Assembly: GCA_950097015.1 (NCBI GenBank)
Contig: CATNEN010000007.1
Coordinates: 10,168,001 to 10,232,000 of the forward strand
Direction: 5' to 3'
DNA length: 64,000 bases
Source of the DNA: Macrostomum hystrix
Lineage: Eukaryota > Animalia > Platyhelminthes
The position numbers and the translations under genes are program-made. Position 1 is the first letter of the stretch. Each line of letters begins with the position of its first letter. Shown here piece after piece: positions 18,370 through 62,818 of this stretch. The notes beneath the pieces are model-generated. The model was given only the letters and a program-made list of their open reading frames with translations, made no database searches and was not told where the DNA came from.

Positions 18370-18941
18370 TCAGTTCTCAAACAGCTTCTCAAAGCTCGCC
18401 CTGACTTTGTCGTCTTGAAAGCGCCATTGGCTCCAGCAGCCGAGGTCACGCTGGACCTCGTTGACAACAACAATCGAAGCCGAGCCGCCAGTGTTTGAGT
18501 CGGCCACCAGCAGCCGGCTGATGCAGCCGAGGCCAGCGGGCAACTGGCCGCAGTCAGGATTGGCCACCGTCCAGACGCGGCCGGAATGAGGCCCAGCGAC
18601 GGCGAGGCCAACTAAATCGCCAACGGAGCGGCCAATCAGCAGAAGGCCGATGTTGGATTCGAAGCCCAGCTGGCTGACCGTCGGCGGACAGTCGAGCTGT
18701 CGACGCCAAGTCGACGACAGAGACGCCGTCGCGGACGCTGACGAATACTCAAATTCGGCAGCAGCGGCGAGGTCGCAGGCGAGGCTGTCGCCGATGCTGG
18801 GCTGCCCGGCCAGGTTGAAGGCGCGGACGAAGCGCAGCTCGGCGGTGTCAAACTCGCGCACTATGGAGCCGCCGCGGAATGACAGGAACAGGTGGCGGCC
18901 GGCGGCGTCCGAGATCAGGCATTCGACCTCCCCGGACAACT
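18370..18941 (-). CDS. LRRK-like terminal exon 22 (WD40-like plus C-terminal helix)
   Basis: cgcAG acceptor in phase 1. Ends KVRASFEKLFEN*. Confidence 0.7.
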
Positions 18942-38600: not shown

Positions 38601-41600
38601 GAGAATACATGAGATAGTGGCTGAGAGAATACATGAGATAGTGGCTGAGAGAATACAGGACATAGAAGGCTGAAAGGTGAGAAAAATGAGAAATCGTAGG
38701 AATGATAGGAAGCGGGCTTTTAATTTCGAAACAGCCAGAGCGAGAAAGCACACGAGAGCTACGGAAGGCCAAACAAAATAGTGAGGTAGGCAGAGGCCAA
38801 ATAGACTGTTTAGCATGGCTGTTGGTGCAATAACACAGCTCGGGGTCCGTTGCGAAAGCAGAAGAATTATTTATGCAGGAGGAAGTTCACACAAGCCAAT
38901 GCGCTAATTACGAATTGATATTGTACAGTGAGCGAGAAGACAGAGCGGACACGCAACAGGTGAGTGGACCGTCTCCAAGCCCATGACACCGCGGGTCAGG
39001 TAAACAACAGCTGCTAATATGCTAATATAGCCGTTTATGCAGAACACCTCTGCTGAGATTTCATTTTGGTTGCCATGTGACAGTTGTCTGTGCGTGTCTC
39101 CATGTGGACATTGCACACGGGAGCTGCGGCACTGATTGATCAGCAACAGGAGGGAGGCGGGGCGACGTCCTAGAAGGAATGCAAACTTTGCGTAAGCGGC
39201 GCATTGGGGTGGGGGTCGGTGGGGTCGTAAAAACTTGCGCAGGCCGATAGCGCCGCTCGACCTACCGCAAAGGGCGGGCTGTTTCTTGGAAAATAACCTC
39301 CGTCCGAGCGGCTCGATTTCCCCAACAAACAACAAACGGCAAGTACTAAGAAGTTCCATTGCCCGAATCGGACCCAAGTCCTCTCGGCTGCATTCACAAT
39401 AACAAAACATTGCAGTCGTGTTATGCTACTTATAGTAGAGATGTGAAAATTTCTGATGGATAAACATTCGATTGCACTGTGTGGGAAGCTGCCAAAAAGT
39501 GCTCGCCAAAATATGGTATGAAAAAATGATGAAATCCCTAACTTCAATGAGGATTAGAATTCCTATCTAAAATGAGGATCTGAATCCCAAACTAAAATGA
39601 GGATCTAAATCCCAAACTAAAACGAGGATCTAAATCCCAAACTAAAATGAGAATCTGAATCCCAAACTAAAATGAGGATCTAAATCCCAAACTAAAATGA
39701 GGATCTAAATCCCAAACTAAAATGAGGATCTAAATCCAAAACTAAAATGAGGATCTAAATCCCAAACTAAAATGAGGATCTGAATCCCAAACTAAAATGA
39801 GGATCTAAATCCCAAACTAAAATGAGGATCTAAATCCCAAACTAAAATGAGGATCTGAATCCCAAACTAAAATGAGGATCTAAATCCCAAACTAAAATGA
39901 GGATCTAAATCCCAAACTAAAATGAGGATCTAAATCCCAAACTAAAATGAGGATCTGAATCCCAAACTAAAATGAGAATCTAAATCCCAAACTAAAATGA
40001 GAATCTGAATCCCAAACTAAAATGAGGATCTAAATCCCAAACTAAAATGAGGATCTAAATCCCAAACTAAAACGAGGATCTGAATCCCAAACTAAAATGA
40101 GAATCTGAATCCCAAACTAAAACGAGGATCTGAATCCCAAACTAAAATGAGAATCTGAATCCCAAACTAAAATGAGGATCTAAATCCCAAACTAAAATGA
40201 GGATCTAAATCCCAAACTAAAACGAGGATCTGAATCCCAAACTAAAATGAGAATCTGAATCCCAAACTAAAACGAGGATCTGAATCCCAAACTAAAATGA
40301 GAATCTGAATCCCAAACTAAAACGAGGATCTAAATCCCAAACTAAAATGAGAATCTGAATCCCAAACTAAAATGAGGATCTAAATCCCAAACTAAAATGA
40401 GGATCTGAATCCCAGACTAAAATGAGAATCTGAATCCCAAAATAAAATGAGGATCTGAATCCCAAACTAAAGTGAGGATCTGAATCCCAAACTAAAATGA
40501 GGATCTAAATCCCAAATTAAAATGAGGATCTGAATCCCAAACTAAAATGAGGATCTAAATCCCAAATTGAAAGGAGGATCTGAATCACAAACTAAAATGA
40601 GGATCTAAATCCTAAACTAAAATGAGGTTCTAAATCCCAAACTAAAATGAGGATCTGAATCCCAAAATCGAAATGAGGATAACATCCCATACACAGGTGA
40701 GGATTATAGAGACGTACCTTCTCATCGTAGGTGCAGTCCTGCAGCACCTCAGGCGCGATGTAGCCGGGGGTCCCCTGCTTGCCCGTGACGCCCTGCAGGC
40801 CGGTGTTCAGCGAGGTGCCGTAGTCGCCCAGCTTGACGTGCCGCTCGGCCAGGGGGTCGACGGAGAACACCAGCACGTTGTCGGTCTTGAGGTCGCGGTA
40901 CAGCACACTCTGCGAGTGCATGTAGGCTATGGCGGAGATCACCTGCGGAAGCATGAGACCTGTGCTCAATTTCTTAAGGGGAAATCCGATAATAGTGAAA
41001 TCCCGTCAGCTCACCTGGTAGGCAATCTTAAAGGTGAGCTGGCGGCCCAGCGGCAGGATGATCCCCGGCCGCTGCCTGTGGGCCTCCTGGCGCACATTGG
41101 CCAGCGAGCCCAGCGGCGCCAGCTCGGTCAGGAAGCAGAGCGGCTCCAGGCAGATGCCGCGGAACTCAACCAGGAACGGGTGGCGAAGCGACTGCAGCAC
41201 GTTGGCCTCGCGCCGCATTTGCTTGAGGCCGTCAATGGCCTGGTCGAGTAGCCGGGCCAGCTGCAGCTGCACCAGCGAGTCGGCGGGCGACTGGGCGGGC
41301 AGCCCGGTGGGCGAAGATTCGCTGGCGCTGTTGGTGCTTCGGGCCAAGGCTGATGAGCGACGCCCGGACGCAGGACGAAGTCGGACTGGTTCGTCATTTA
41401 GATTCTGCGATGGCAACTGCTGCTGGCGCTGCTGCTGCTGCTGCTGCTGCTGAAAGTCCATAAAGCTTTCAAGAAATTTGATAATCTTTGCAGCCACCGG
41501 TACGTTGTCAAGCCTGGATGAGGTTTGAGTGAGAATCCTTGGGTTTATCCAATAGCCTTTAAATACTGGAAAGTGACTTAAGACAGTCACTCCAACAGCA

Positions 41601-44600
41601 CAGGACAGTCACTCCAACAGCACAGGACAGTCACTCCAACAGCACAGGACAGTCACTCCAACAGCACAGGACAGTCACTCCAACAGCACAGGACAGTCAC
41701 TCCAACAGCACAGGACAGTCACTCCAACAGCACAGGATAGTCACACCAACAGCACAGGACAGTCACTCCAACAGCACAGGATAGTCACACCAACAGCACA
41801 GGACAGTCACTCCAACAGCACAGGACAGTCACACCAACAGCACAGGACAGTCACTCCAACAGCACAGGACAGTCACTCCAACAGCACAGGATAGTCACAC
41901 CAACAGCACAGGACAGTCACTCCAACAGCACAGGACAGTCACTCCAACAGCACAGGACAGTCACTCCAACAGCACAGGACAGTCACTCCAACAGCACAGG
42001 ACAGTCACTCCAACAGCACAGGACAGTCACTCCAACAGCACAAGAGTGCACCCTATCGACCTACCAGGCCTTGTAGACGCTGCCGAAGGATCCCTCGCCC
42101 AGTAGGCAGTCAGGCTCTCGCCGAAGCCGCAGTCGGCTAGCCTCGACGATGATTGATTTGTCGACGTCCGCGAACAGCAGCTCCGGCACGAGGTCGCTTG
42201 GCTGCAGGGCGGCCCGGCAGCGGGGGCAGCGCAAGGGGCGGCGGGTCAGGGCGCGCTCGGCGCAGTGCCGGTAGCTGAACCAGTGCACCTTGGCGCGCCA
42301 GTCCGGGACCCGTTCGGACAGCGAGCTCAGCGTCATGTAACCGCCGTCCATCAAGCTGGCCAGGCACTCCGGGCAGGGCACCTGCGGTTCCGTTTCGGTT
42401 CCATCGATTATCCACCTGCTAACAGCAGCTAATTATCCGAGGTTATCCCCCTGCAAATCTCACAGATGATCCCCTGCAAATCTCACAGATGATCCCCTGC
42501 AAATCTCACAGATTATCCCCCTGCAAATCTCACAGATTATCCCCCTGCAAATCTCACAGATTATCCCCCTGAAAATCTCACAGATTATCCCCCTGCAAAT
42601 CTCACAGATGATCCCCTGCAAATCTCACAGATTATCCCCCTGCAAATCTCACAGATTATCCCCCTGCAAATCTCACAGATTATCCCCCTGCAAATCTCAC
42701 AGATTATCCCCCTGAAAATCTCACAGATTATCCCCCTGCAAATCTCACAGATGATCCCCTGCAAATCTCACAGATTATCCCCCTGCAAATCTCACAGATT
42801 ATCCCCCTGCAAATCTCACAGATTATCCCCCTGCAAATCTCACAGATTATCCCCCTGAAAATCTCACAGATTATCCCCCTGAAAATCTCACAGATTATCC
42901 CCCTGCAAATCTCACAGATTATCCCCCTGCAAATCTCACAGATTATCCCCTGAAAATCTCAAAGATTATCCCCCAGATAATCCAACAAGATTATCACAGA
43001 TTACCCACCAGCTAATCCCACAAGATTATCCCACAGATTACCAACCAGCTAATCCCACAAGATTATCCCACAAATTACCAACCAGCTAATCCTAGCAGAT
43101 TATCCCATAGAAAATCCTTCTATTAATCCTAATAGATTATCGCATAAACGGAAATACAGAAAGCACAAAAATCCCACCATTCGCTGCATCAGGCCGCCTT
43201 GCCCATTCCCCCGAGCGTCGCCCAGGTTCCTGTCATCCACACAGTCATCGTCCTCGCCCACGTCAGTGTAGTCGTCGTTCTCGCCGCCGGCCAGTCCGGG
43301 GAACCAGGTCTCCAGGAGCAGGTCCACCTCGTCAACCAGGAGGCCGATTGGAGCAAAGTTTTTCTGGCGACTGAGCACGCACAGCTCAAGCTCCACGCCA
43401 CCATTGGACAGCTGAATGCCGAACCGACCATCGTCGCATTCGCCCGCGTGCTTCACCATGAAGCCGCTGCGCCAGCAGCAGACGCTGCTCCGGCTACGGC
43501 CCAGCAGCTCCCGCTCCCAGCCGCCGAGGGACCGGCTGCTCCGGCTAAGGAGTTGAGCAGCGTCTGCGGCGCCGATGGAGGATGAGTACAGCAGCCGGGA
43601 GGCCATGCTCGGCTGCTTGGCAACCAGCGCCCGCCTGCCGCGCTGGCCGGCGGCCAGGTGGACGCGGGCGCGCTCCTTCAGGTCGGCCACCGCCGTGTGC
43701 AGCCGGGCGGCCAGGCGGGGCCACAGACCGGGCGGGCAATAGGGGAAGCGGTACACGCGCAGCAGGGCACGGCACGGCTGCAGCGACTCGCGCGGCACCG
43801 TCTCGGGGTCCAGCGGCTCCGTAGGGTGCTCGGACAGGTCGTTCGGGAACAGAAGCCTGCGGACGGGTGGGGTGTCAAGGGACTGTCAAGGACCGATGTA
43901 AGGGAATTGCGGCTGGTGTGTGGGACAGTGTCTGTAGGAGATGGGGTGTGTGGGACAGTGTCTGTAGGAGATGGGGTGTGTGGGACAGTGTCTGTAGGAG
44001 ATGGGGTGTGTGGGACAGTGTCTGTAGGAGATGGGGTGTGTGGGACAGTGTCTGTAGGAGATGGGGTGTGTGGGACAGTGTCTGTAGGAGATGGGGTGTG
44101 TGGGAGAGTGTCTGTAGGAGATGAGGTGTGTGTGACAGTGTCTGTAGGTGATGGGGTGTGTGTGACAGTGTCTGTAGGAGATGGGGAGTGTGGGATAGTG
44201 TCTGTAGGAGATGGGGAGTGTGAGAGAGTGTCTGTAGGAGATGGGGAGTGTGGGATAGTGTCTGTAGGAGATGGGGAGTGTGGGATAGTGTCTGTAGGAG
44301 ATGGGGAGTGTGGGATAGTGTCTGTAGGAGATGGGGTGTGTGGGAGAGTGTCTGTAGGAGATGGAATTGTGGGACAGTGTCTGTAGGAGATGGGGTGTGT
44401 GGGAGAGTGTCTGTAGGAGATGGAATTGTGGGAGAGTGTCTGTAGATGAGGAGTGTGGGAGAGTGTCTGTAGGAGATGAGGTGTGTGGGATAGTGTCTGT
44501 AGGAGATGAGGTGTGTGGGAGAGTGTCTGTAGGAGATGGGGAGTGTGGGAGAGTGTCTGTAGGAGATGAGGTGTGTGGGAGAGTGTCTGTAGGAGATGAG

Positions 44601-47600
44601 GTGTGTGGGAGAGTGTCTGTAGGAGATGAGGTGTGTGGGAGAGTGTCTGTAGGAGATGGGGAGTGTGGGATAGTGTCTGTAGGAGATGGGGAGTGTGGGA
44701 GAGTGTCTGTAGGAGATGAGGTGTGTGGGAGAGTGTCTGTAGGAGATGGGGAGTGTGGGATAGTGTCTGTAGGAGATGGGGAGTGTGGGAGAGTGTCTGT
44801 AGGAGATTAGGTGTGTGGGAGCGTGTCTGTATGAGATGAGTGAGGGGGGATGTGTAGATTTCGTGTGCTGTTAGAAGTACTGGTAAGGTTGGCAACTTAC
44901 GTTTTGTCATTAAGCTTATGGCAGATGTTAAGCTCATGAAGCAGGTGTATGAAGGTGTCTGTGTGATCCTCAGGAATCATCAGGGCCGAGGTGAGAAAGC
45001 TCTTGAGCTGGCTGATCTGCAGCTCACCGCGCTGAGGAACTGCGGACTGAGAAGAGCCAATATTTTGCTTTGCCTACTGTAAGTAGCGAGATAGCGCATT
45101 TTTTATTTAAATCTGATAAAGGGCACATAAGGTTCCGAGTTAAACTGTTAACTGTTAAACGACTACCAAAACTGTTAGATACTGTCCAAAACTGTTAGAT
45201 GACTACCAAAACTGTTAGATGACTACCAAAACTGTTAGATGACTACCAAAACTGTTAGATGACTACCAAAACTGTTAGATGACTACCAAAACTGTTAGAT
45301 ACTGTCCAAAACTGTTAGATGACTACCAAAACTGTTAGATGACTACCAAAACTGTTAGATGACTACCAAAACTGTTAGATACTGTCCAAAACTGTTAGAT
45401 GACTACCAAAACTGTTAGATGACTACCAAAACTGTTAGATGACTACCAAAACTGTTAGATGACTACCAAAACTGTTAGATAACTACCAAAACTGTTAGAT
45501 ACTGTCCAAACCTATTAGATGACTACCAAAACTGTTAGATTCTGTCCAAAACTGTTAGATACTGTCCAAAACTGTTAGATACTGTCCAAAACTGTTAGAT
45601 GACTACCAAAACTGTTAGATACTGTCCAAAACTGTTAGATGACTACCAAAACTGTTAGATACTGTCCAAAACTGTTAGATGACTACCAAAACTGTTAGAT
45701 ACTGTCCAAAACTGTTAGATGACTACCAAAACTGTTAGATACTGTCCAAAACTGTTAGATGACTACCAAAACTGTTAGATCACTACCAAAACTGTTAGAT
45801 GACTACCAAAACTGTTAGATACTGTCCAAAACTGTTAGATACTGTCCAAAACTGTTAGATACTGTCCAAAACTGTTAGATGACTACCAAAACTGTTAGAT
45901 CACTACCAAAACTGTTAGATGACTACCAAAACTGTTAGATGACTACCAAAACTGTTAGATGACTACCAAAACTGTTAGATAACTACCAAAACTGTTAGAT
46001 AACTACCAAAACTGTTAGATACTGTCCAAAACTTTTGGATAACCACCAAAACAGTTAGATGACTACCAAAACAGTTTTCTCTCCAAAATTGTTGGATAAC
46101 TACCAAAACTGTTAGATAACTACCAAAACTGTTAGATAACTACCAAAACTGTTAGATAACTACCAAAACTGTTAGATACTGTCCAAAACTGTTAGATACT
46201 GTCCAAAACTGTTAGATAACTACCAAAACTGTTAGATACTGTCCAAAACTTTTGGATAACTACCAAAACTGTTAGATACTGTCCAAAACTGTTAGATGAC
46301 TACCAAAACTGTTAGATAACTACCAAAACTGTTAGATAACTACCAAAACTGTTAGATACTGTCCAAAACTTTTGGATAACCACCAAAACAGTTAGATGAC
46401 TACCAAAACTGTTAGATGACTACCAAAACTGTTAGATACTGTCCAAAACTGTTAGATAACTACCAAAACTGTTAGATACTGTCCAAAACTTTTGGATAAC
46501 CACCAAAACAGTTAGATGACTACCAAAACAGTTTTCTCTCCAAAACTGTTAGATAACTACCAAAACTGTTAGATACTGTCCAAAACTTTTGGATAACCAC
46601 CAAAACAGTTTTCTCTCCAAAATTGTTGGATAACTACCAAAACAGTTAGATAGCTACCAAAAGGTTAGATAACTGCCAAAACTGTTAGATAACTACCAAA
46701 ACTGTTAGACAAAGTCAGGGTCCAGTTGAGCTCACCACGCTTTTGAACAAAACAACCGCCTGCAGCACGAACAGGAACCAGGGTGGGTTCGGGCAGAACA
46801 GCGAAGGGTTGAAGTCGCCGCGAATGTGCAGCAGAATACCCAGCTCGTGCATGAAGTCGATGGCTGCGGGAGAGAGGACAGAACCTCAGCTGGTCACTCC
46901 CAACTGGTCACTCTACTGGATTATTGGTCACTCCACTGGATTAATGGTCACTCCACTGCATTATTGGTCACTCCACTGGATTAATAGTCACTCAACTGCA
47001 CTATTGGTCACTTCACTGACTATTGAGGTGTCCCTAATGCACACACTGCTGTCTGGTCACTCTAATGCACACACTGCTGTCTGGTCACTCTAATGCACAC
47101 ACTGCTGTCTGGTCACTCTAATGCACACACTGCTGTCTGGTCACTCTAATGCACACACTGCTGTCTGGTCACTCTAATGCACACACTGCTGTCTGGTCAC
47201 TCTAATACACACACTGCTGTCTGGTCACTCTAATGCACACACTGCTGTCTGGTCACTCTAATGCACACACTGCTGTCTGGTCACTCTAATGCACACACTG
47301 CTGTCTGGTCACTCTAATGCACACGCTGCTGTCTGGTCACTCTAATGCACACACTGCTGTCTGGTCACTCTTCCACCTTCCGCACCTTTCTCAAAGGCCT
47401 GGCTCGGCACCTTGCAGTTTCTCGCAGCATTTTTTAGCAGCTCCAGCATTTCATCCTCCGTGATGAGCGGCACGTATCTGAGGCAAATTTTAATTTCTTT
47501 CGAATTAGCAACCAGTGAGATGAAGCCAAATCAACTCAATCCTAATCAGAACCAGCTTCCCATTAACTCTCATCCGAATCCCAGCATCCCAACAGCTCAT

Positions 47601-48645
47601 AAATCCCAAATCCCAATCTAGAACCAACTTCCCAATAGCTCATAGATTCCAAATCCCAATCTAGAACCAACTTCCCAATAGCTCATAAATCCCAAATCCC
47701 AATCTAGAACCAACTTCCCAATAGCTCATAAATCCCAAATCCCAATCTAGAACCAGCTTCCCAATAGCTCATAGATCCCAAATCCCAATCTAGAACCGGC
47801 TTCCCAATAGCTCATAAATGCCGAATCCCAATTCACAAGTAGCCTTCCCGCCTCATCATGAAGTGCCTGGCTCCTCAACCCACCTCCGCGCATTGTTGCT
47901 GTGCTGAATGCTCTCCAAGCGTTGCACCACGAGCTCCATGGCGTTGGTGAAGAAGAGCGGCAGCTCGCGGCCGATCACGCGGCCCCGCTGGGCATCCTCC
48001 GGGCAGGGCAGCAGCAGGGACCACCGCAGCACCGACCAGCGAAGACTGGCGACCGACTGCTCATCCGGCTGGTCCGGAAGGGTCAGGAATTCGACCACGG
48101 GCGGGTAGCCGGGAGAGTTCGCCAGCTCCTGCTGCCAGCTGCAGATAAGAGAGTTCAAAGCGAACTCGTCACCCTGCACCAGGTTCTGCCCGACGGCAAT
48201 CACGAAGCTCTTCGGGGCGCGGGCCTGTGGCGGAGGGCCGGGGTTCAATCACACCGATTCACCGAGCTGATCTGGCACTCCTTGTCACTTGTCACTCCTT
48301 GTCACTCCTGCAACCTACGTCACTCCTGCAACCTAAGTCAGTGCTGGTCAACTAGTAAACAAGCCCGCAAGCCCACCTGTATTGTGAGCAGGCTCTGCTT
48401 AATCTTATCGAACGCCTGCTTGCCGTCCAGGCAGTCCCACAGCAGCAGGTAGAGCGTGTGTTTGGTGAGCACAATCTCGTGTATACTGTCTATGGCCGGG
48501 GAGCCGCCGATCCCGCCACCGACACCGGACTTCAGAACCCAGGCGTGCAGGTGCACACTCTGCACGTGCACCGGCAGGAAGTCGTCCTGTAGTGGAAATT
48601 TTACGCTGATACAACAACTACTACAACTATTACTACTACTACAAC

Positions 48646-48688
<43 letters not shown>

Positions 48689-51600
48689 TGACACTAGACC
48701 CAAGGGCCAGTGCATGTGTTGTGTCAAGCACACTAGCAGGTGGGGACTGCACACCTATTACTACTACTATTACTACTACTACTGCTACTACTGCTACTAC
48801 TACTATTGCTACTGCTGCTACTACTGCTACTACTGCTACTACTGCTACTACTGCTACTACTGCTACTACTGCTACTACTGCTACTACTGCTACTACTGCT
48901 ACTACTGCTACTACTACTATTGCTACTGCTGCTACTACTACTACTGTCTCTTACCGGAGCCTGCCTGCCACCAAGCCGGTTATCCTGGGTGCCGCGCCGC
49001 TGTCCGCCGCCGCGCCGGCTCACCTCCAACATCTCGCGCCGCGTCAGCTGCAGGTGAAAAGTCTGGATTGGCGGTTTCACCAGGGCGTCCCGCAGGCTAC
49101 GCCGCAGCGGTGCCTCAGTGTTCTGAATGTAGTCGCGCACCGCCCGGTCAAGGGACTGCCATTCGCCGCCGCCACTAGCCGAGTCGCTGACGGCCGCCGG
49201 CTGGTGAAGGTAGAGCGAGCGGCTTGTATCCAAAGAGCGCTGAACGAAACCCAGGTGTTGCATCAGCGACCTTCGATCGTTATCCTGCGCAGAGGCAATT
49301 CCAGATTAGAAAATAGCATTTTTCTAAATAAAAATTCGATCTTGTCTACTTGTGCAGGCCAGTCAGTAGTAACAATAGTTGTGGCTCACCCCATTGCCGG
49401 CCACAACCAGCTTCAGATGATAATACGGGCTGGTTCTGTACAGCTGCAGCCGCAGGTGATTTAGCAGTGGAATTGTGCTCACAAAGTCTGCAATCGTGGA
49501 TTGCGATAAATTAACATTATGTGTACTCAATTGAGGGGGAATAAATGTGAGCATTTTCCTTGAGGATCAAACCTGAAGATCAAACTCAATGAACATCCCC
49601 AAATGAGAGATGAACTATTAATAACTGTTGACCATAGAAGTGGCGCGCACTTCTATATAAATTCCCGAGTAACAAATTTCTAGTTGGGTTCTATGGTAAC
49701 ATATTTCAACTGCTGTTTCAGGATCTGCGCCGCAATAGAAGATGCGAATTTGGATTTAAACCGCAGCTAAGGGTCGGATAATTTACTGAATGCATCGGCA
49801 AACAATAGACGAGCCACCAAAGCAGCCGCCATGCGCTCCTGCCCCCGCTAAGCTGCCACGGAAGCGGAGCCACGCCGAGGCAAACGCCGAGGCCACAACC
49901 AGCGCCAGCAGCAGCAGCGGCAGCCACGCCGGCTCGTCAACATCTCGGCGTCGCAGCGATTGCGGCCTGGGCGATGACCAAGAAGTTCTTGGCAATAACT
50001 TGGCAACGACCCTTCTCAGCTGCGTTGGCTGCGAAAGCGCCATCAGAGCAGGCGAGGAGATGATGCAATGCTCGGAGTGCCTGCTGGCCTGCCATGCGGC
50101 TCCGCTGTGTGTCACCGGCGCCTTCACCAACAACAGCTCATCGGCCGGTTTAGTCTGCCGGCTGTGCCTGCGGGCGACCATTGTCTCCGACGCTCCCGCC
50201 TCAGCGGATGGCGACGAGGCCTCGGTGTCGGCGGCTGACATCGCGCAAGGCATCGGGCTAGTGACCAACGAGTGCTCAGTGTGCCTGGAGCCGCTGCCGC
50301 ATGACAGGGTGGCTGCGCCCGACTGCTGCCCGCAGCACCGCTTCTGCCCGCCCTGCCTGCGCGACTGGGCCAGCCGCCACCGCATCTGCCCGCTGGACAG
50401 AAGGCCCTTCAACCAAATCCTCATCTGCTCCGGCCAGCTTCCAGGCGCCGTGCTGTGCAAGGAGGGCCCGAGAGTGCCAAAGAGGCGGGCAAGTCGCGAC
50501 GAGCACCACTGAGTAGGGGACTCAAGCATCAAACTTTGAGTACCTATTCGTTACAGATGCCTGGACGAGATTTCTAAGAATTGTTTCACAAAAGCACACG
50601 CCCGCGCCAGGACAAAGAGTAACAAAATTTAAATTCAATAATTCGTACTTTTTAATTGGAATTAAATCTGGCCACTTGGCGATTTGAAAATTGAAATCCG
50701 AAAATAAAAAAGTGCCGACTGGCCAGGAGACGAACCTTTCTGCGCAAACTGGCGCAGCGGCTCCTGCAGCTGGGCCGGGTCGCACACGAGGCGCATCAGT
50801 TGGCTGCACTGAGCCAGCTCCACCGGGATCTGCCGGATGCCCCGGTTGCTAGGGGCCGGGCGCAGGGAGGGAAGGTGACGGGCGGTTATTCGCTACGTCA
50901 GCATGCAGGAAAGAAATACAATAAAATTTCTAGCTAGCTTTTTCTCATTAGTTACCGAACTAACAAACCTTTTTTGCCGTGACTACAAATCGACTTTTCC
51001 GATTTTTTCCTTTTACAACTCGATAGGTGAAAATATGAAACCGATGACTCATTATCCCCCTCAGATCCCTGATGACTCATCATCCACCTCAGATCCCCTG
51101 ATGACTCATTATCCACCTCAGATCCCCCGATGACTCATCATCCACCTCAGATCACTGATGACTCATCATCCACCTCAGATCCCTGATGACTCATCATCCA
51201 CCTCAGATCCCCTGATGACTCATCATCCACCTCAGATCCCTGATGACTCATCATCCACCTCAGATCTCTGATGACTCATCATCCACCTCAGATCTCTGAT
51301 GACTCATCATCCACCTCAAATCCCTGATGACTCATCATCCACCTCAGATCCCCTGATGACTCATTATCCACCTCAGATCTCTGATGACTTATCATCCACC
51401 TCAGATCTCTGATGACTCATCATCCACCTCAGATCTCTGATGACTCATCATCCACCTCAGATCCCCTGATGACTCATTATCCACCTCAGATCCCCTGATG
51501 ACTCATCATCCACCTCAAATCCCTGATGACTCATCATCCACCTCAGATCCCTGATGACTCATCATCCACCTCAGATCACTGATGACTCATCATCCACCTC

Positions 51601-54600
51601 AAATCCCTGATGACTCATCATCCACCTCAAATCCCTGATGACTCATCATCCACCTCAGATCCCCTGATGACTCATTATCCACCTCAGATCTCTGATGACT
51701 CATCATCCACCTAAGATCTCTGATGACTCATCATCCACCTCAGATCTCTGATGACTCATCATCCACCTCAGATCCCTGATGACTCATCATCCACCTCAGA
51801 TCACTGATGACTCATTATCCACCTCAGATCTCTGATGACTCATTATCCAACTCAGATCCCGATGATCGCACGCCTGTCAAATGCGGGAGTTGCGAGGCAA
51901 TCATTCTACGCAGGAATGCCTCACCCTGAAATGTCCAGGGTCTCCAGCATGGCCAGCTGGCAGACGCTTGGCGGCACTCGATCCAGCCGGTTATCGCTGA
52001 GGAACAGCCGATGCAGGCTGGTCAGCTGCTTCGGGATCTCCAGCTGATGAATTAGAGTCATTTTGTGAAAAAAACGTGATAAATTTCCCAAACATGCTAT
52101 CATTTCTACTGAAGTTAGTAGCATGATCCAGACAACAAAATGATTGGCGAAAATAAGAGACTCACCTCGTACTCGTAGACCGGAGGCTGGACTGGGCGCA
52201 AGAACCAGGGAATCGGCAGGCGGCCGCTGCTCGATTCGCGCTTTAACCGCTCCTTCAGCTGGTTGCCGGCCAGGTCCAGCTCAAACAGCTTTTCGCAGTG
52301 CCACAGGTGGGCGGAAGGCAGCGTTGTGAGCTTGTTGCGGGCCAGGCACAGGCGGGACAGGGTCTCTGAGCCAGGCGGTGGGGTTGGCGTTTAGATAAAT
52401 CCGCATTGACAAGTTGTCGAAGGATTTAGGGTAGGCTGCTTGTCACTGAAGGATCTGAGGTGGATGATAAGTCATCAGGGATATCAGGTGGATGATGAGT
52501 CATCGGGGATCTGAGGTGGATGATGAGTCATAAGGGATCTGAGGTGGATGATGAGTCATCAGGGATTTGAGGTGGATGATGAGTCATAAAGGATCTGAGG
52601 TGGATGATGAGTCATCAGGGATATCAGGTGGATGATGAGTCATCGGGGATCTGAGGTGGATGATGAGTCATCAGGGATATCAGGTGGATGATGAGTCGTC
52701 GGGGATCTGAGGTGGATGATGAGTCATCAGTTATCTGAGGTGGATGATGAGTCATCAGTGATCTGAGGTGGATGATGAGTCATCGGGGATCTGAGGTGGA
52801 TGATGAGTCATCAGTGATCTGAGGTGGATGATGAGTCATAGTGAGATCTGGGGCAATTGAGTCGCCTTGAGTTCGTTTGAAGGACTCACTGATGGCCACC
52901 ATGAGCACGACAGACTTCTCAGCGGACAGTCTGTTGTCGGACAGTCGCAGCTCTCTGAGGCTGTTCTGCCACAGGGTGGCCATGTTGCCAGGGACGTCCG
53001 TGATGCTGTTTTTGCTAAGCTCCAGAACCTCCTGAATGAATGCATTTTTTTGTTCAGTAGACCAGTTTAGTCCCTGAACTAAAGTAAACCATCCAGGGTT
53101 TACTCGTAGATTCAGAGTCAAAATTTGTCCTTTCCAGAACAAAAAATTGTTCATGTATTTTTTATCCAGGTGAATATACTAGTTCTTTTCTGAATGAAGA
53201 CTAAAAATTGATTAGGCCTATGGGCAGGCATGCAGGAAGGCAGGCAGGCAGGCAGGCAGGCTCACCATCGGGCAGGCCCAGCTCTGAAAGCTGGTTAGTT
53301 GGTTTCCGTTGGCAAGGAGGCGGAGCAGCCGGCCGCAGACCTGGCTGAGCTGCGGCGGCATGGAGACGATGCCGTTGTCAGACAAGTCGAGGATCTGCAG
53401 CTGCCGGCAGGCCCAAGGGGCCGAGTTCCAGGCGGTCCGTCCCAGCAGATTTTTTGCAACGATCAGCTCCTGCAACGACTCAACTGCGAAGACATGCGGC
53501 GGCAGCTCCTTCAGGCAGTTCTGGGATAAATTCAGCTGAAGTAACGTCCTGCGGGTCGGTTGAGTAGCTTGGAGAGGAGAGCAGAAAAGAAGAGAGGAGA
53601 GGAGAGGAGAGGAGAGGAGAGAAGAGAGGAGAGTTGCGGAGAGGAGAGGAGAGGAGAGGAGAGGAGAGGAGAAGAGAGGAGAGGAGAGAAGAGAGGAGAG
53701 GAGAGGAGAGGAGAGGAGAAGAGAGGAGAGGAGAGAAGAGAGGAGAGGTGCGGAGAGGAGAGGAGAGGAGAGGAGAGGAGAGGAGAGGAGAGGAGAGGAG
53801 AAGAGAGGAGAGGAGAGGAGAGGAGAGAAGAGAGGAGAGGAGAGGAGAGGAGAGGAGAGGAGAGGAGAGGAGAGGAGAGGAGAGGAGAGGAGAGGAGAGG
53901 AGAGGAGAGGCGCACCTGGAAGGCTGGGTGCACTGGGGAGCCTCCTCCAGGCTGGCGATGTTATTCCGCGAGACGTCCAGCAGCCGCAGCCGCGGCAGGC
54001 CGTGCAGAAGGGCGGCAGGCAGACAGGTGAGGCCGCAGTCGACCAGCGTCAGCTCACTGATGGACTCAGCATCGGGCAGGTGGACGGGGCTGAGCCAGGC
54101 CAGGCGGACACCAGAGAGCTGGGCAGCGATGCTTGGCTTCCCAGCTCCGTCCAGGGCGCCGGTGTCCGGACGCACAGAGCGGCGGTGCATGAGCTGCGCC
54201 AGGGCGTCACGCAGGGTGCGGTCCCGCGACTGTGCGTGGACGGCCTCGCGTGGGTCGCAGGGAGCGCCTTTAGCCAGTAGGGCGGTCAGGAGTTCCACAT
54301 TGCCGGCGCGCAGTCCGACTGTCGTCGGCTCGGAGGTGGCCGCTGTGGCGCCGAGTTCCTGCAGCGTCCTGACGATGGCCAGTCCGTCGCTGGATTCGCT
54401 GTCGGTCTCGACGGAGGCGGCGGCCGCCTCAAGCAGGAGATTCAGCGACGCTGGCGGCAGTGGTGAAAAGTCTTGGCGGGCCGCCAGCAGCAGGTGGAAC
54501 ACCGCCGAGCTACCAGAGGCGCAGCACTCGAACCACGGGTTGCCCTGGCAGTCCGCCGGCGTCTGCGGCAGATCCGGCAGTCTGGCGCCAGCCTTTAGTA

Positions 54601-57600: not shown

Positions 57601-59040
57601 CACAGGTGGTGAATAATTCAGTTTTCGACCTTCCTTTTTTAGATTTCTGGTCTGCGATGCAGAGGCGACGCAAGAAATATAATGGACTTCTATAATGACT
57701 TCTAGACTTCACGGGGGTATTAAAAATAACCACATTTTTTCTTTTTCCTATATCTACTAAAATACCCAACCAATCGCATGAAGGCCCAGAAGATGGACTA
57801 AATTTTCCGATCTATCCGATGAAACAAGTTCTAGAACTGTTCTGTTCTGTTCTGTACTGTACTGTTCTGTACTGTTCTGTACTGTTCTGTACTGTTCTGT
57901 ACTGTTCTGTACTGTTCTGTACTGTACTGTACTGTTCACATTGTTACGACTAATAATAGTATTGAACCAATATGAATACCAGGGGGTCAGTAGGAGAGTG
58001 GTTAATGCATTTGCCTCTCGCACCAAGGTCCCTGAGCTCGATTCCGCAGCGAGGCCACATTGTTTTAAAGAAGGCTTGGCGGCTAGTCGTGCAATTTACG
58101 CCCTTGAGGGCCAACCTCCAGTGAAAGTGTACACTGCCTGATGATGAGAAAGTCAGGGCAGATGTACACACCTGTGTGAGCGTGTGCCTGCGTACGGTGT
58201 CTGTGCGCATGTGTGCTCAGGAGTCAGCGAAATAGGCAGAATTGCCTCCTCACAAAATGATGTGCCATTGCCCGCAGCCCTTCTGCAAATAACATAAATT
58301 ATAATATGAATTCGCCAAATAGGTTTATACAGAACAATGTTAGTTGTTCTTGTCACCAGGGTCATCGACAAGAATCGCTGAATATCTTGACGATGCTGAA
58401 GTCGGACAGTTTTGAAAGTTATTTCATCATAAAGAGCGGAAATGTTTTGGAAGCTATCGAGAAGTTGGCAGTGGGCATTTAAGTTCCCCCCGGTCTTTCT
58501 ACTGTTAACAATCAGCGATACAAGCAGACGCACGCAAGCCCACCTGGCCGCGATGCACAGCGGGGTGCCATCCGGGCTGTCCAGTTCCAGGTTGACGCCA
58601 CGCATGCCCAGCAGGTCGGCCAGGCGGCCAGCATCGCCCCGGCTGCACCAGTGGTGCACCAGCCGTTGGGCGTTGATGTTGACGGCGATGAGGTCCTGAA
58701 CGTCGCGCCCTCCGGCCATGCGCCAGCTCTCGGTGTAGAACTGCTCCCGGGAGATTCGCCTGTCGGGCTCCTCGGCCTTGAAGTAGGACAGGACCAGGTC
58801 CAGCAGCCGGTTCAGGTCTAGCAGGCGGAGCAGGAATCGGAGGCACAGGGTTGCTGATAACTGCTTAATTAAACAGAGCTAATTTTGCATGCATTAGCGA
58901 GGGTGCAGATATGAAGTTGAAGCGCAGGAGGGGAGGCCTGCCCAGATATATATCCGAGGACTTGTACGCCACGGGCAGGGGGAGAGGGGCCAGACTGGCC
59001 GGCTGTTCACCGGAGACTCACCCAGAGAAATTGCGGCCAT
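18370..59040 (-). CDS. LRRK1: LRRK1-like Roco kinase (ANK-LRR-ROC-COR-kinase-WD40-like), 22 exons, about 2145 aa
   Basis: Exons 59040-59022, 58817-58544, 54629-53916, 53548-53266, 53031-52890, 52365-52166, 52043-51925, 50848-50736, 49487-49390, 49284-49024, 48586-48377, 48224-47884, 47477-47386, 46863-46736, 45046-44901, 43856-43178, 42381-42065, 41513-41015, 40942-40718, 33931-33554, 20400-19773, 18941-18370. All are GT-AG and phase-compatible (6438 nt). Kinase motifs GEGSFG, VAAK, YRDLK, DYG, GTPGYIAPE. Linkage of the last two exons is inferred. Confidence 0.85.
18979..19752. repeat. 20-24-bp minisatellite ACCTGCACCTGTGCAC(AC)n filling LRRK intron 21
   Basis: Tandem units between exons 21 and 22. 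Confidence 0.95.
19773..20400 (-). CDS. LRRK-like exon 21 (beta-propeller/WD40-like)
   Basis: gtgcAG acceptor in phase 0, matching exon 20. Beta-strand-rich sequence. GTGAGG donor. Confidence 0.7.
20470..20731. repeat. 21-22-bp minisatellite GGGATCTCAAAGCTGTCAGTT
   Basis: About 12 units. Confidence 0.92.
22397..22960. repeat. 34-bp purine-rich minisatellite
   Basis: GAGGGGAGAAATGAGGATGGGAGGAGACGGAGGA units. Confidence 0.93.
23617..23671. repeat. (CAG)n microsatellite
   Basis: About 17 triplets, intronic. Confidence 0.9.
26291..27626 (+). CDS. MPPED1/2 (239FB)-like metallophosphoesterase-fold protein, probably catalytically inactive; nested in LRRK intron 20
   Basis: Exons 26291-27075 and 27347-27626 (phase 2). 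MPPED-like motifs RIAHVSDT, DVLVHTG, PHKYKIFVAG, IYLQDS, GVRFYGTPW, WSNIPDGVD, RPKL. AATAAA at 28293. Confidence 0.85.
28607..29560. repeat. 17/19-bp minisatellite ACTGCAACACTGACACT(CT)
   Basis: About 50 units. Confidence 0.95.
32668..33493. repeat. 36-bp minisatellite CTGGTCCTTCAATGAGCGCATCCTCGGCCACTCCGC
   Basis: About 23 units with no spacers. Confidence 0.95.
33554..33931 (-). CDS. LRRK-like exon 20 (kinase C-lobe)
   Basis: VDVYSFGMLLYELIIGDRPF...CWRQSPGARPTA. GTAAGC donor at 33553. Confidence 0.9.
33975..34683. repeat. 22-bp minisatellite CAGAATCCCGAATCATCCATTA
   Basis: About 32 units next to the exon 20 acceptor. Confidence 0.95.
35925..37185. repeat. 23-bp minisatellite ACTGTAGGCTGTGAGGAGTGCCA
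   Basis: About 55 units. Confidence 0.95.
38231..38657. repeat. 24-bp minisatellite TAGTGGCTGAGAGAATACATGAGA
   Basis: About 18 near-perfect units. Confidence 0.95.
39567..40680. repeat. 25-bp minisatellite ACTAAAATGAGGATCTAAATCCCAA
   Basis: About 44 units next to the exon 19 donor. Confidence 0.95.
40718..41513 (-). CDS. LRRK-like exons 18-19 (kinase core)
   Basis: VAAK, REANVLQSLRHP, ELAPLGSL, YRDLKTDNVL, KLGDYGT, GTPGYIAPE. Confidence 0.93.
41582..42042. repeat. 22-bp minisatellite ACAGTCACTCCAACAGCACAGG
   Basis: About 21 units filling intron 17. Confidence 0.95.
42065..47477 (-). CDS. LRRK-like exons 13-17 (COR domain to kinase glycine loop)
   Basis: AIDFMHELGILLH, RVYRFPYCPPGLWPRL, VDEVDLLLETWFPGL, VPCPEC, DLVPELLFAD, LLGEGSFGSVYKA. 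Confidence 0.88.
42443..43110. repeat. 23-24-bp minisatellite CAGATTATCCCCCTGCAAATCTCA
   Basis: Fills intron 16. Confidence 0.93.
43915..44840. repeat. 30-bp minisatellite TGGGASAGTGTCTGTAGGAGATGGGGTGTG
   Basis: Fills intron 15. Confidence 0.95.
45161..46710. repeat. 20-bp minisatellite (GACTA/ACTGT)CCAAAACTGTTAGAT
   Basis: About 75 units filling intron 14. Confidence 0.95.
47034..47371. repeat. 28-bp minisatellite CTAATGCACACACTGCTGTCTGGTCACT
   Basis: About 12 units in intron 13. Confidence 0.93.
47545..47832. repeat. 43-bp tandem repeat
   Basis: AAATCCCAATCTAGAACCAACTTCCCAATAGCTCATAAATCCC units in intron 12. Confidence 0.88.
47884..49487 (-). CDS. LRRK-like exons 9-12 (degenerate ROC domain)
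   Basis: LKLVVAGNGDNDRRSL, LTKHTLYLLLWD and LLTIQARAPKSFVIAVG match the ROC scaffold by position and sequence. Confidence 0.8.
48610..48946. repeat. (ATA)n and (CTA/CTG)n microsatellites
   Basis: Located in intron 10. Confidence 0.92.
49790..50512 (+). CDS. Intronless PHD-finger plus RING-finger protein (PHRF1/SCAF11-type RING), nested in LRRK intron 8
   Basis: PHD: CVGC...CSEC...H...C...CRLC. RING: CSVC...C..HRFCPPCLRDW...CPLDR. TATATAAA near 49654 and AATAAA at 50703. Confidence 0.82.
   Translation: MHRQTIDEPPKQPPCAPAPAKLPRKRSHAEANAEATTSASSSSGSHAGSSTSRRRSDCGLGDDQEVLGNNLATTLLSCVGCESAIRAGEEMMQCSECLLACHAAPLCVTGAFTNNSSSAGLVCRLCLRATIVSDAPASADGDEASVSAADIAQGIGLVTNECSVCLEPLPHDRVAAPDCCPQHRFCPPCLRDWASRHRICPLDRRPFNQILICSGQLPGAVLCKEGPRVPKRRASRDEHH
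50736..53548 (-). CDS. LRRK-like exons 4-8 (LRR domain)
   Basis: Repeated LxxLxLxxN motifs: LQLNLSQN, LQILDLSDN, LELSKN, LRELRLSDN, LFELDLAGN, LHRLFLSDN, LETLDISGN. Confidence 0.88.
51043..51865. repeat. 28-bp minisatellite GATGACTCATCATCCACCTCAGATCCCT
   Basis: About 29 units in intron 7. Confidence 0.95.
52452..52850. repeat. Same 28-bp minisatellite in inverted orientation
   Basis: GATCTGAGGTGGATGATGAGTCATCAGG units in intron 5, the reverse complement of the 51043 array. Confidence 0.93.
53572..53910. repeat. (GAGAG)n pentanucleotide tract
   Basis: Fills intron 3. Confidence 0.95.
53916..54629 (-). CDS. LRRK-like exon 3 (ANK to first LRRs)
   Basis: Ankyrin-like helices followed by LRLLDVSRNNIASL. 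Confidence 0.85.
54650..57291. repeat. 24-bp minisatellite GTTAGATTCCACTGTCTAACAGG(T)
   Basis: About 110 units with an internal inverted repeat TGTTAGA/TCTAACA. Confidence 0.95.
57836..57937. repeat. 10-bp repeat CTGTACTGTT
   Basis: Tandem units. Confidence 0.88.
57978..58302 (+). mobile_element. tRNA-derived SINE-like insertion
   Basis: A-box-like TAGGAGAGTGG (57991) and B-box-like GAGCTCGATTCC (58034), an A-rich tail, and the direct repeat AATATGAAT at 57969-57977 and 58303-58311. Confidence 0.6.
58544..58817 (-). CDS. LRRK-like exon 2 (ankyrin region)
   Basis: Ends DGTPLCIAAR, which joins HGKVEAVDLLLKAGA in exon 3 to form a canonical ankyrin repeat. Confidence 0.8.
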
Positions 59041-61253: not shown

Positions 61254-62259
61254 ATGTCCAGTCATGAGAATCAGGTGGCCATTGTCACCGGAGCGAACTC
61301 CGGCATCGGCCTGGAGGTGACGAAGCTGCTGGCCAGCAGCGGCTTCATCGTGGTGATGGCCTGCCGCAGCCTGGACAGAGCCAATCAGGCGGTGGCCGCG
61401 ATGCAGAACGAGACCACCGCGCTGAGGAGCAGCGGCTCCTTCGTGCCCATGAGGGTGAGTGGTCGGCTAAGTCATATTTGTCATCCGAGCTCACATGGTG
61501 GACGTCAACCTGTAACCAGGCACCTTTTGAAGCCTTAAAATGTGGTGAGATTTTGCAAGCGCAATTTTCCCAACTGATTTACAGCTGGACCTGAGCGACT
61601 ACGAATCTGTGCGGGAATTCGCGAGAAAGTTTCTGGCCAAGTTCCCCCGCCTGGATGTGCTCATCAACAACGCGGGATACGCTGAGGAATTCACAAAGAA
61701 GCAGCGCAACTTGAACGACAAGGGCCACGAAATGACCATCGCCACCAACCACCTGGGCCACTTCCTGCTCACCAACCTGCTGCTGCAGCGCCTGAAGGAC
61801 ACCGCCAGCAGTCACGGAGCTGCCCGCATCCTCATCGTGAGCTCGGACATCCACCTGAGCAGATTCGGCATGAAGCCGCTGGACTTTGACGACCTGCTCA
61901 TGGAGAAGCCGGGCGCTTACAACGGCGGCCAGGCCTACAAGAGCTCCAAGACCATGAATGTGCTGCACTGCCGCAAGCTGGCCCGGCTGCTCCACGGCTC
62001 CAACGTGTTCGTGAACTCCCTGCACCCCGGCTTCATCCCGAGCACCGGCTTCTTCTCCGGCTGCATGCGCTGCTGCTTCATCTGCTGCTTCAGCGGCCTT
62101 TGCTGCTGCTGCCGCATCACCCGCAGTCCGCAGGAGGCCGCCGGCCACATGTTCAACATCGCCACCGGCGTGCCGCCCTACGACGACACGACCGGCCTGT
62201 ACTTTTACGACGGCAGGTCCAAGCAGACGTCCGAGGAGGCGTCCCTGCCGGCCAACTAG
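61254..62259 (+). CDS. Retinol dehydrogenase-like SDR, copy 1; TAG 13 codons before the paralogous stop
   Basis: Exons 61254-61454 and 61585-62259. Motifs TGANSGIG, NNAG, NHLGHFLL, YKSSK. The homologous frame continues to TGA at 62298. AATAAA at 62366. Confidence 0.85.
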
Positions 62260-62818
62260 GACCGGCTGTGGGAGTGGAGCGAGGCCGTCACTGCTTGAAG
62301 CCGATGGCCTAAATAACATCCAGACTTCTTCAAGTTTGCGTGTAAAATTTACATTCTTCTAATTGAATAAAGTGGAAAGCATGCGAGACACTCGCTTAGC
62401 TGTTTAATTCGCAAGCTTGATCAAATCATTCTTGGCCAGTAAAATAAATTGGAAACGCATCGAAGAAGCAATGGACAATGGCTTGTCATTCTGGAGCAGG
62501 CCAGTCTCAGCAAAATCGAGGCATAGCTTGGGTTCATTATTGAGTGTATGTGCAAAAAAATGTTCGAATTTGAACAAGGCAAGTGAGGCAGGTAATTGTA
62601 CAGCAATGACACTTTTAAATGGCTGCATTCAAAGTCAAGGCAGATGAGTATTCAAACGGATAGTAAAAGGACAAGCTGCCAGAATTGTTAAGGCAATTTC
62701 AAGCCTGCAAAAGCAGAGGGATAAACAATGCCAAGATTTGTAAATTTGCGAGGAAATATTTAAAATGACATGCCAAGCAAATTAGGACTGAAAAGCTGAG
62801 GCCGACTAAAACGGAGCT

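What the first reader, a model, noticed from the sequence alone, without database searches (positions are those of the whole stretch)
47884..49487. LRRK-family kinase with a pseudo-GTPase ROC domain
Seen: the spliced P-loop reads LKLVVAGNG|DNDRRSLMQHL, the G3 region reads LHAWVLKSG, and the G4 region reads VIAVGQNLV. Known: LRRK2 has KLMIVGNTGSGKTTLLQQL, LNVWDFAG and VILVGTHLD. So the GKT triad, the G3 Asp and the G4 Asp are all replaced, and the G1-G3 stretch looks lengthened. Scaffold residues persist: IQARA (the R1441-equivalent) and PYCP (the Y1699-equivalent). The kinase catalytic motifs are intact and the frame stays open across 22 exons. Inference: a full-length Roco kinase uncoupled from GTP binding. 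This is notable because P-loop mutants of human LRRK1/2 lose kinase activity.
Basis: partly seen in the sequence, partly recalled or inferred. Interest (0 to 1): 0.88.

Follow-up and report, generated by a model that had tools for sequence, protein, structure and literature searches.

The report
Flatworm LRRK kinase with dead GTPase
A flatworm carries, beside two ordinary LRRK genes, an expressed third relative of the Parkinson's-disease kinase LRRK2. Its built-in GTP switch has lost every nucleotide-binding motif while its kinase looks intact, so it is a natural test of whether such kinases need the switch.

Summary
On the minus strand, four exons (49487-49390, 49284-48955, 48586-48377, 48224-47884) encode a ROC domain.

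- **Motifs.** G1 reads GNG|DNDRR, G3 reads AWVLKSG and G4 reads GQNLV. G2 and G5 are not recognisable.
- **Insert.** The G1-G3 distance is 128 residues, against 32-89 in 231 LRRK homologues.
- **Splicing.** Transcript contigs from four samples are 100% identical to the window and use exactly the 49390|49284 junction. No alternative junction can supply GK[ST].
- **Conservation.** The Macrostomum lignano orthologue shows the same losses (GNGPKDRE, AWVLHSG, GQNLP). Its ROC exons are 50-72% identical to these.
- **Homology.** An LRRK-specific ROC profile places exons 1, 3 and 4 collinearly on the domain. Exon 2 matches nothing.
- **Kinase.** The motifs are intact: GEGSFGS, VAAK, YRDLKTDN, DYG, APE.
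- **Paralogues.** The same genome holds two canonical LRRK genes, one LRRK2-like and one LRRK1-like, each with GxxxxGKT, WDFxG and THxD.

Best reading: a fast-evolving, expressed LRRK paralogue whose ROC has become a structural pseudo-GTPase, so GTP cannot regulate the kinase.

Not done: GTP binding, kinase activity, dN/dS and a structural model. I found no published pseudo-GTPase LRRK. I rate it a new variant of a known kind, of moderate to high interest.

The parts
58558..58788 (-). N-terminal ankyrin-region exon (approximate bounds)
   Evidence: tblastn with M. lignano P0016 residues 17-93, 65% identity
53915..54628 (-). Ankyrin / start of LRR exon (approximate bounds)
   Evidence: P0016 residues 94-329, 65% identity; open frame
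51924..53550 (-). Four LRR exons (about 53550-53266, 53031-52849, 52366-52157, 52073-51924) separated by minisatellite introns
   Evidence: tblastn with P0016, P0008 and P0009
50736..50849 (-). Last pre-ROC exon (...LRQFAQK)
   Evidence: Transcript contigs join 50736 to 49487 in 4 samples
49390..49487 (-). ROC exon R1: beta1 and first half of the degenerate P-loop (..YYHLKLVVAGNG)
   Evidence: 14.4 bits on positions 4-28 of the LRRK ROC profile, shuffles at most 1.8
48955..49284 (-). ROC exon R2: second half of the P-loop (DNDRR), alpha1 start (SLMQHL) and a 110-residue stretch that replaces switch I and the interswitch; no detectable homology
   Evidence: long form used; -4.1 bits on the ROC profile; no Pfam hit; Atlas gave nothing usable
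48377..48586 (-). ROC exon R3: beta3 with G3 remnant (LHAWVLKSG), Gly-rich switch II insert, beta4, alpha3 (..LLTIQ)
   Evidence: 26.7 bits on profile positions 83-126
47884..48224 (-). ROC exon R4: ARA (R1441-equivalent Arg), beta5 with G4 remnant (VGQNLV), alpha4-beta6-alpha5, start of COR-A
   Evidence: Gapless alignment to LRRK2 1440-1516; 19.6 bits on profile positions 127-236
47386..47477 (-). COR-A exon
   Evidence: RNA junctions; 90% identical to M. lignano
46736..46863 (-). COR-A exon
   Evidence: RNA junctions; 82% identical to M. lignano
44900..45052 (-). COR-A exon
   Evidence: tblastn with P0017, 73% identity; weak PF16095 hit
43175..43861 (-). COR-B exon with PYCP (Y1699-equivalent) and a long COR-B loop before WRSGFMV
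   Evidence: PF25497 at 26.9 bits; P0017 72% identical
42064..42381 (-). COR-B-to-kinase linker with CPEC...CPRC and the kinase Gly-loop GEGSFGSV
   Evidence: Aligned to LRRK2 1847-1896, E = 1e-6, and to LRRK1
40703..41590 (-). Kinase N-lobe and catalytic exons (VAAK, poly-Q insert, alphaC Glu, YRDLKTDN, DYG, APE), split by a short intron near 41000
   Evidence: Pkinase 66.5 bits and PK_Tyr_Ser-Thr
33554..33934 (-). Kinase C-lobe exon
   Evidence: PK_Tyr_Ser-Thr 39.3 bits; P0017 66% identical
18373..20340 (-). Candidate WD40-like C-terminal exons (about 20340-19800 and 18890-18373, stop after 18373), split by an in-frame minisatellite; unverified
   Evidence: Open frame; blastx hit to Nematostella LRRK1 residues 1688-1811 at E = 0.04 only; no Pfam or PDB hit

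Best explanation
This is a transcribed, correctly spliced gene for a divergent LRRK-family kinase (ANK-LRR-ROC-COR-kinase) of a Macrostomum-type flatworm.

Its ROC domain keeps the core strands and helices of a Ras-like G domain. It also keeps the residues that face COR: the Arg of ARA (LRRK2 R1441) and the Tyr of PYxP (LRRK2 Y1699).

All five nucleotide-binding motifs are gone. About 70 extra residues sit where switch I and the interswitch should be.

The ROC therefore most likely no longer binds GTP or GDP. It probably serves as a fixed structural block within the ROC-COR-kinase core, a pseudo-GTPase.

The kinase retains every catalytic motif and is probably active. Any regulation must come from something other than a nucleotide switch.

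**Shown:** sequence, splicing, expression, conservation in a second species, and canonical paralogues in the same genome.

**Inferred:** loss of nucleotide binding, retention of the fold, and kinase activity.
For: - **Motifs and frames:**
- **Splice junctions:** 100%-identical spliced transcript contigs from 4 samples.
- **Alignment:** gapless to the LRRK2 ROC and to 34 LRRKs, all with GxxxxGK[ST], W[DE]xxG and [TN]xxD. Of 125 homologues of at least 1200 aa, 124 carry a P-loop; the only one without is N-terminally truncated. 120 of them also have W[DE]xxG 30-120 residues downstream.
- **Homology of exons:** the ROC profile places R1, R3 and R4 collinearly, far above shuffles.
- **Second species:** M. 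lignano orthologue P0016 reads GNGPKDRE / AWVLHSG / GQNLP. The Asp-Arg at the Gly-Lys positions is shared. Its ROC exons are 50-72% identical, against 51-90% for other exons. No Roc or Ras Pfam hit is recorded for P0016, although every canonical LRRK has one.
- **Kinase:** motifs and Pfam hits.
- **Paralogues:** two canonical LRRK genes at G000:C38 and G000:C30.
- **Human precedent:** P-loop mutants K1347A and T1348N fail to bind GTP and lose kinase activity (PMC3976973).
Against: - There is no biochemical or structural evidence.
- dN/dS could not be computed, so constraint on the ROC rests on protein identity and an intact frame alone.
- The whole protein sits on a very long branch (1.6-2.2 substitutions per site against a median of 0.3). 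That could also mean general relaxation of function.
- Conservation is shown for only one other species, from error-prone gene models.
- Depth of Logan contigs says nothing about expression level or tissue.
Confidence: 0.72

Rival explanations
1. The ROC still binds a nucleotide (or another ligand) through a non-canonical pocket, as some atypical G domains do, and remains a switch of a different kind.
For: The Asp-Arg pair at the Gly-Lys positions, and much of the R2 insert, are conserved between the two Macrostomum species. This hints at a selected function for the remodelled site.
Against: G1, G2, G3, G4 and G5 are all lost together. An Asp replaces the second P-loop Gly. The Mg-binding Ser/Thr is Arg in one species and Glu in the other. 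The guanine-specifying Asp is Val or Pro.
Confidence: 0.1
2. The gene is decaying: a transcribed pseudogene or a paralogue under relaxed selection, with neither ROC nor kinase doing anything.
For: The branch is very long and the amino-acid composition unusual. There are low-complexity inserts (poly-Q in the kinase N-lobe, Gly-rich switch II). Pfam scores are weak for COR-B and ROC.
Against: The frame is open across all confirmed junctions, with precise GT-AG splicing in 4 samples. The orthologue is retained in M. lignano at 50-90% identity per exon, with colinear exons. All kinase catalytic residues are kept. COR-A exons are 82-90% identical.
Confidence: 0.1
3. The pseudo-GTPase is a gene-model artefact: another junction or an unseen exon restores a normal P-loop.
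For: Nothing found.
Against: Four independent transcript assemblies use 49390|49284. The intron has stops in every frame and no GK[ST]. The P-loop aligns without a length change. G3 and G4 lie inside exons and are degenerate regardless of splicing. M. lignano shows the same state.
Confidence: 0.02

Closest known systems
Metazoan LRRK kinases (LRRK1 / LRRK2 / 'LRRK3' clades of Marin 2008 and Reimer et al., 10.1101/2022.11.22.517582)
   Same: ANK-LRR-ROC-COR-A-COR-B-kinase order. YRD and DYG kinase signatures. The ARA Arg and the PYxP Tyr at the ROC:COR interface. A WxxGfxf motif in COR-B. A long alphaC-region insert, as in LRRK1 and LRRK3. Best database hits are 'LRRK1-like' proteins.
   Different: No GxxxxGK[ST], DxxG or [NT]KxD, and about 70 extra residues between G1 and G3. 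Neither the ROC exons (scanned singly) nor the M. lignano orthologue's contiguous ROC (precomputed Pfam) show a Roc or Ras match. The branch is extremely long and no sister clade is supported.
Human LRRK2 P-loop mutants K1347A and T1348N
   Same: Loss of the Lys and Thr that hold the phosphates and Mg2+.
   Different: The engineered mutants lose GTP binding, dimerisation, stability and kinase activity (PMC3976973). Here the loss is natural, is accompanied by wider remodelling, and is kept in a gene that stays intact and expressed. This implies compensation.
PseudoGTPases (such as CENP-M and the p190RhoGAP pG domains; own knowledge of Stiegler and Boggon 2020, not checked here)
   Same: A G-domain scaffold with degenerate G motifs, used as a structural or interaction module.
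   Different: This one is embedded in a Roco kinase. No paper in the searched library links pseudoGTPases with Roco or LRRK proteins in this sense.
Canonical LRRK paralogues of the same genome (G000:C38 LRRK2-like; G000:C30 LRRK1-like)
   Same: LRR-ROC-COR-kinase genes in the same animal.
   Different: They read GFGGRGKT / WDFAG / THVD and GNANIGKT / WDFGG / THLD. Their ROC exons score 39-132 bits on the ROC profile, against 14-27 bits here.

Membership tests
LRRK-type Roco kinase | LRR repeats N-terminal to ROC | tested here: met
   tblastn of the LRR regions of P0008 and P0009 onto 53550-51927. Orthologue P0016 carries PF13855, PF12799 and PF00560. Pfam on the raw window frame found nothing.
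LRRK-type Roco kinase | ROC domain homologous to Ras-like G domains | tested here: met
   An LRRK ROC profile maps R1, R3 and R4 collinearly (14.4, 26.7 and 19.6 bits; shuffles at most 3.7). R4 aligns without gaps to LRRK2 1440-1516. The general Pfam Roc model does not detect it.
LRRK-type Roco kinase | COR-A and COR-B following ROC | tested here: met
   PF25497 scores 26.9 bits (cut-off 27) on the window exon. PF16095 and PF25497 are recorded for orthologues P0001 and P0017. COR-A exons are 73-90% identical to M. lignano.
LRRK-type Roco kinase | Ser/Thr kinase domain with catalytic motifs after COR | tested here: met
   Pkinase 66.5 bits and PK_Tyr_Ser-Thr 39.3 bits. GEGSFGS, VAAK, alphaC Glu, YRDLKTDN, DYG and APE were read in frame.
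LRRK-type Roco kinase | C-terminal WD40 domain | tested here: inconclusive
   Only a blastx hit at E = 0.04 to the WD40 region of Nematostella LRRK1 at 20340-19951. No Pfam or PDB hit. No reads were laid there.
Active Ras-like / Roc GTPase | G1 P-loop GxxxxGK[ST] | tested here: not met
   GNGDNDRR here; GNGPKDRE in M. lignano.
Active Ras-like / Roc GTPase | G2 switch I Thr | tested here: not met
   The region is replaced by R2, which has no similarity to ROC and no TxG[IV]-type motif.
Active Ras-like / Roc GTPase | G3 DxxG | tested here: not met
   WVLKSG: the Asp is Val, and the Gly is shifted by one residue. M. lignano reads WVLHSG.
Active Ras-like / Roc GTPase | G4 [NT]KxD | tested here: not met
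   QNLV aligned on LRRK2 THLD. M. lignano reads QNLP.
PseudoGTPase | G-domain fold retained and no nucleotide binding | not testable with these tools
   The fold is inferred from collinear profile matches. No structure of the spliced domain could be predicted, and binding needs an assay.
LRRK2 orthologue | Placement inside the LRRK2 clade | tested here: not met
   Orthologue P0017 falls outside the strongly supported LRRK2 clade in both trees. The LRRK2-like gene of this genome is at C38.

The most novel reading that the evidence does not exclude
A naturally GTP-independent LRRK. The remodelled ROC, with its conserved 110-residue insert, would lock the ROC-COR-kinase core in one conformation or dock a new partner. 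The kinase would then be constitutively competent, or the protein would act as a regulatory heterodimer partner of the canonical LRRK1-like and LRRK2-like paralogues. That would show that the nucleotide requirement of LRRK kinases is structural and can be bypassed by evolution.
Probability: 0.3. Interest if true: 0.8.

Novelty: new variant of a known kind. Interest (0 to 1): 0.62.

Why it matters
In human LRRK2 and LRRK1, loss of GTP binding abolishes kinase activity. It is still argued whether that reflects signalling or merely folding and dimer stability (PMC3976973).

A natural LRRK keeps an intact, expressed kinase after losing every G motif, in an animal that also keeps canonical LRRKs. 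It therefore offers a comparative handle on that question. The substitutions and the insert that accompany the loss point to what compensates for a missing nucleotide. Macrostomum is also a laboratory model with RNAi and transgenesis (own knowledge).

The limits are real. It has been seen in one fast-evolving genus only, and nothing about its biochemistry is known.

Tried and rejected
- **Pfam on single ROC exons:** no hit. The general Roc model is too distant, so I built an LRRK-specific profile instead.
- **PDB search with R3 alone:** only chance hits to integrase.
- **Own-genome search with R3 and R4:** no close paralogue.
- **Representative search with the COR-B exon:** only M. lignano plus three distant LRRK1-like proteins. 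No other flatworm orthologue appeared.
- **Homologue search with P0003, region 120-420:** M. lignano only. The length window excludes full-length proteins.
- **Two trees to assign the gene to LRRK1 or LRRK3:** unresolved. The branch is long, and no arthropod or nematode anchors were among the returned hits. A first tree attempt timed out.
- **ESM Atlas on the R2 insert:** recognition below threshold, only generic helical look-alikes.
- **WD40 exons:** no Pfam or PDB support.
- **The look-up of encoding contigs:** No M. lignano DNA was obtained, so no dN/dS.
- Pfam on a spliced ROC and structure prediction of the spliced ROC-COR-kinase were left out.
- **Species identity:** a literature search did not settle it.
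- **Rejected readings:** mis-splicing and pseudogene (see the rival explanations).
Full report
**What is there.** The finding lies in a long minus-strand gene whose introns are packed with mini- and microsatellite arrays.

R1 (49487-49390) encodes ...YYHLKLVVAGNG. R2 starts at 49284 with DNDRRSLMQHL. R3 (48586-48377) holds ...VHLHAWVLKSG... and ends ...LLTIQ. R4 (48224-47884) starts ARAPKSFVIAVGQNLV.

All four have GT-AG borders and compatible phases. The 105-nt intron between R1 and R2 has stops in all three frames and nowhere encodes GK[ST].

**Expression and splicing.** A search for sequencing runs found four runs of one study and organism that hold 52-57% of the words of the 1.6-kb stretch. 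That share roughly matches the exon fraction, which I estimate at about 0.6.

Laying their contigs on window 46700-51050 gave 100%-identical spliced contigs in all four samples. The joints are 50736|49487, 49390|49284, 48955|48586, 48377|48224, 47884|47477 and 47386|46863, all CT..AC on the plus strand, which is GT..AG on the minus strand.

So the disputed junction is real. Exon 2 uses the distal donor (48955) and encodes 110 residues. The runs' library type is not on record; I infer an RNA origin from the intron-less contigs. Contig depth cannot rank expression.

**Is it ROC, and is it degenerate?** Pfam detects no Roc in any single exon. R4, however, aligns without gaps to LRRK2 residues 1440-1516, and every hit is an LRRK2 ROC. 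This puts ARA on the R1441 motif and QNLV on THLD.

I aligned the ROC regions of 34 LRRK homologues (LRRK1-like, LRRK2-like, echinoderm and gastropod 'LRRK1-like', and unnamed ones). All read GxxxxGK[ST], W[DE]xxG and [TNS]xxD. The window reads GNGDNDRR at G1 with no length change, WVLKSG at G3, and GQNLV at G4.

A profile built from that alignment places the exons collinearly:

| Exon | Profile positions | Bits | Best of 200 shuffles |
|---|---|---|---|
| R1 | 4-28 | 14.4 | 1.8 |
| R3 | 83-126 | 26.7 | 3.7 |
| R4 | 127-236 | 19.6 | 0.2 |
| R2 | none | -4.1 | 1.3 |

R2 scores like its shuffles. The stretch that should carry alpha1's end, switch I (G2) and beta2 has therefore been replaced or remodelled beyond recognition.

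The G1-to-G3 distance is 128 residues, against 32-89 (median 53) in 231 homologues. G3-to-G4 is 66 against a median of 58, because of a Gly-rich insert in switch II.

Among 125 retrieved homologues of at least 1200 aa, the only one without a P-loop is N-terminally truncated.

**Whose gene, and is the state conserved?** An exhaustive phmmer search of 1.84 billion representatives with the COR-B exon returned only ten proteins. Seven are frameshift-ridden UniProt models of Macrostomum lignano. The rest are 'LRRK1-like' proteins of a nemertean and of sea urchins.

This fits an earlier scan note that the genome is a Macrostomum flatworm. The species was not determined. The assembly is 220 Mb.

M. 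lignano P0016 and P0017 together cover the protein colinearly with the window's exons:

| Region | Identity to M. lignano |
|---|---|
| ANK | 65% |
| LRR | 51-68% |
| ROC | 50-72% |
| COR-A | 73-90% |
| COR-B | 72% |
| Linker | 75% |
| Kinase | 62-66% |

P0016 reads HLKLVVAGNG-PKDREWLMARL, LHLHAWVLHSG and IVIAIGQNLP, with a G1-G3 distance of 123. The pseudo-GTPase state and the insert therefore predate the split of the two species.

The Asp-Arg at the Gly-Lys positions is shared, while the next residue differs (Arg here, Glu in M. lignano). The database records no Roc or Ras Pfam domain for P0016, unlike every canonical LRRK returned.

**The rest of the protein.** The kinase exons carry GEGSFGSV, VAAK, the alphaC Glu, YRDLKTDN, DYG and APE, with Pkinase and PK_Tyr_Ser-Thr hits. 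COR-B holds PYCP (the Y1699 equivalent) and WRSGFMV.

A WD40-like C-terminus is only a weak candidate at 20340-18373.

**Paralogues.** The same genome has two more LRR-ROC-COR-kinase genes. One lies at C38:~28.151-28.166 Mb and reads GFGGRGKT, WDFAGQ and VGTHVD; its best matches are LRRK2-clade proteins. The other lies at C30:~0.982-1.001 Mb and reads GNANIGKT, WDFGGQ and VGTHLD; its best matches are LRRK1-clade proteins.

Reimer et al. report that spiralians keep LRRK1, LRRK2 and LRRK3. By elimination, the window's gene may be the LRRK3 representative.

The trees do not settle this. The M. lignano orthologue sits on a branch of 1.6-2.2 substitutions per site (median 0.3). It lies outside the well-supported LRRK2 clade and has no supported sister. 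No arthropod or nematode anchors were obtained.

**Mechanism.** In LRRK2, K1347A and T1348N abolish nucleotide binding and markedly impair kinase activity, dimerisation and stability (PMC3976973).

Here the Lys is Arg, the Thr is Arg, and the second P-loop Gly is Asp. The G3 Asp is Val and the G4 Asp is Val. Canonical nucleotide and Mg2+ binding is therefore very unlikely (inference).

The hydrophobic strands, alpha3 and the COR-facing residues persist, and the domain evolves no faster than the LRR or ANK regions. The most economical reading is a structural pseudo-GTPase that holds the ROC-COR-kinase core together, while the kinase is regulated otherwise.

Rival readings are a non-canonical ligand, a decaying gene and a model artefact. 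They are weighed in their own sections; the artefact reading is essentially excluded.

**Novelty.** Full-text searches found no paper that links pseudoGTPases with Roco proteins, and none that describes an LRRK as one. A Roco review mentions no such case.

Earlier notes of this scan report pseudo-ROC modules in kinase-less Roco proteins of the same genome. I did not check them. I rate this a new variant of a known kind.

Noticed in passing
window 49705-50765 (+), ORF 49790-50512: An intron-less RING-finger gene (zf-RING_2 at 25.7 bits, plus a Cys-rich PHD/C1-like stretch) is nested on the opposite strand, in the 1.25-kb intron between the last pre-ROC exon and R1. Its contig shows high depth in samples X19 and X21 and is absent in X20 and X22. 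It shares 30 bases with the LRRK exon at 50736-50765.
   Followed up: partly
window 44000-44838, 45150-46709, 46905-47371, 47587-47832, 48646-48945, 51043-51865, 52451-52839: Nearly every intron of the gene is filled by a mini- or microsatellite array (periods 3, 9, 20, 28, 30 and 43; up to 78 copies). Several arrays keep long open frames that mimic exons.
   Followed up: partly
window 61131-62319 (+) and 62819-63885 (-): Two near-identical copies of a short-chain dehydrogenase/reductase-like gene (..VTGANSGIGLE.., ..LINNAGY..) lie in inverted, tail-to-tail orientation.
   Followed up: no
window 41590-41284 (-): About 75 residues of low complexity, including a poly-Q run, sit between the kinase beta3 Lys (VAAK) and the alphaC Glu. 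This is longer than the long alphaC-region insert described for LRRK1 and LRRK3. M. lignano has a shorter version.
   Followed up: no
window 42381-42200 (-): The COR-B-to-kinase linker carries CPEC...CPRC, which looks like a zinc ribbon. The first CPxC is shared with nemertean and sea-urchin LRRK1-like proteins (PCPICIS, PCPVCLS).
   Followed up: no
window 18373-20454 (-): A 694-codon open frame holds two unique coding-like parts separated by an in-frame Cys/Val-rich minisatellite.
   Followed up: partly
G000:C9:662158-664096, C33:1132123-1141023, C25:3549565-3553093: Three further ROC-COR loci showed no kinase match within the stretches examined. The genome is rich in Roco genes.
   Followed up: no
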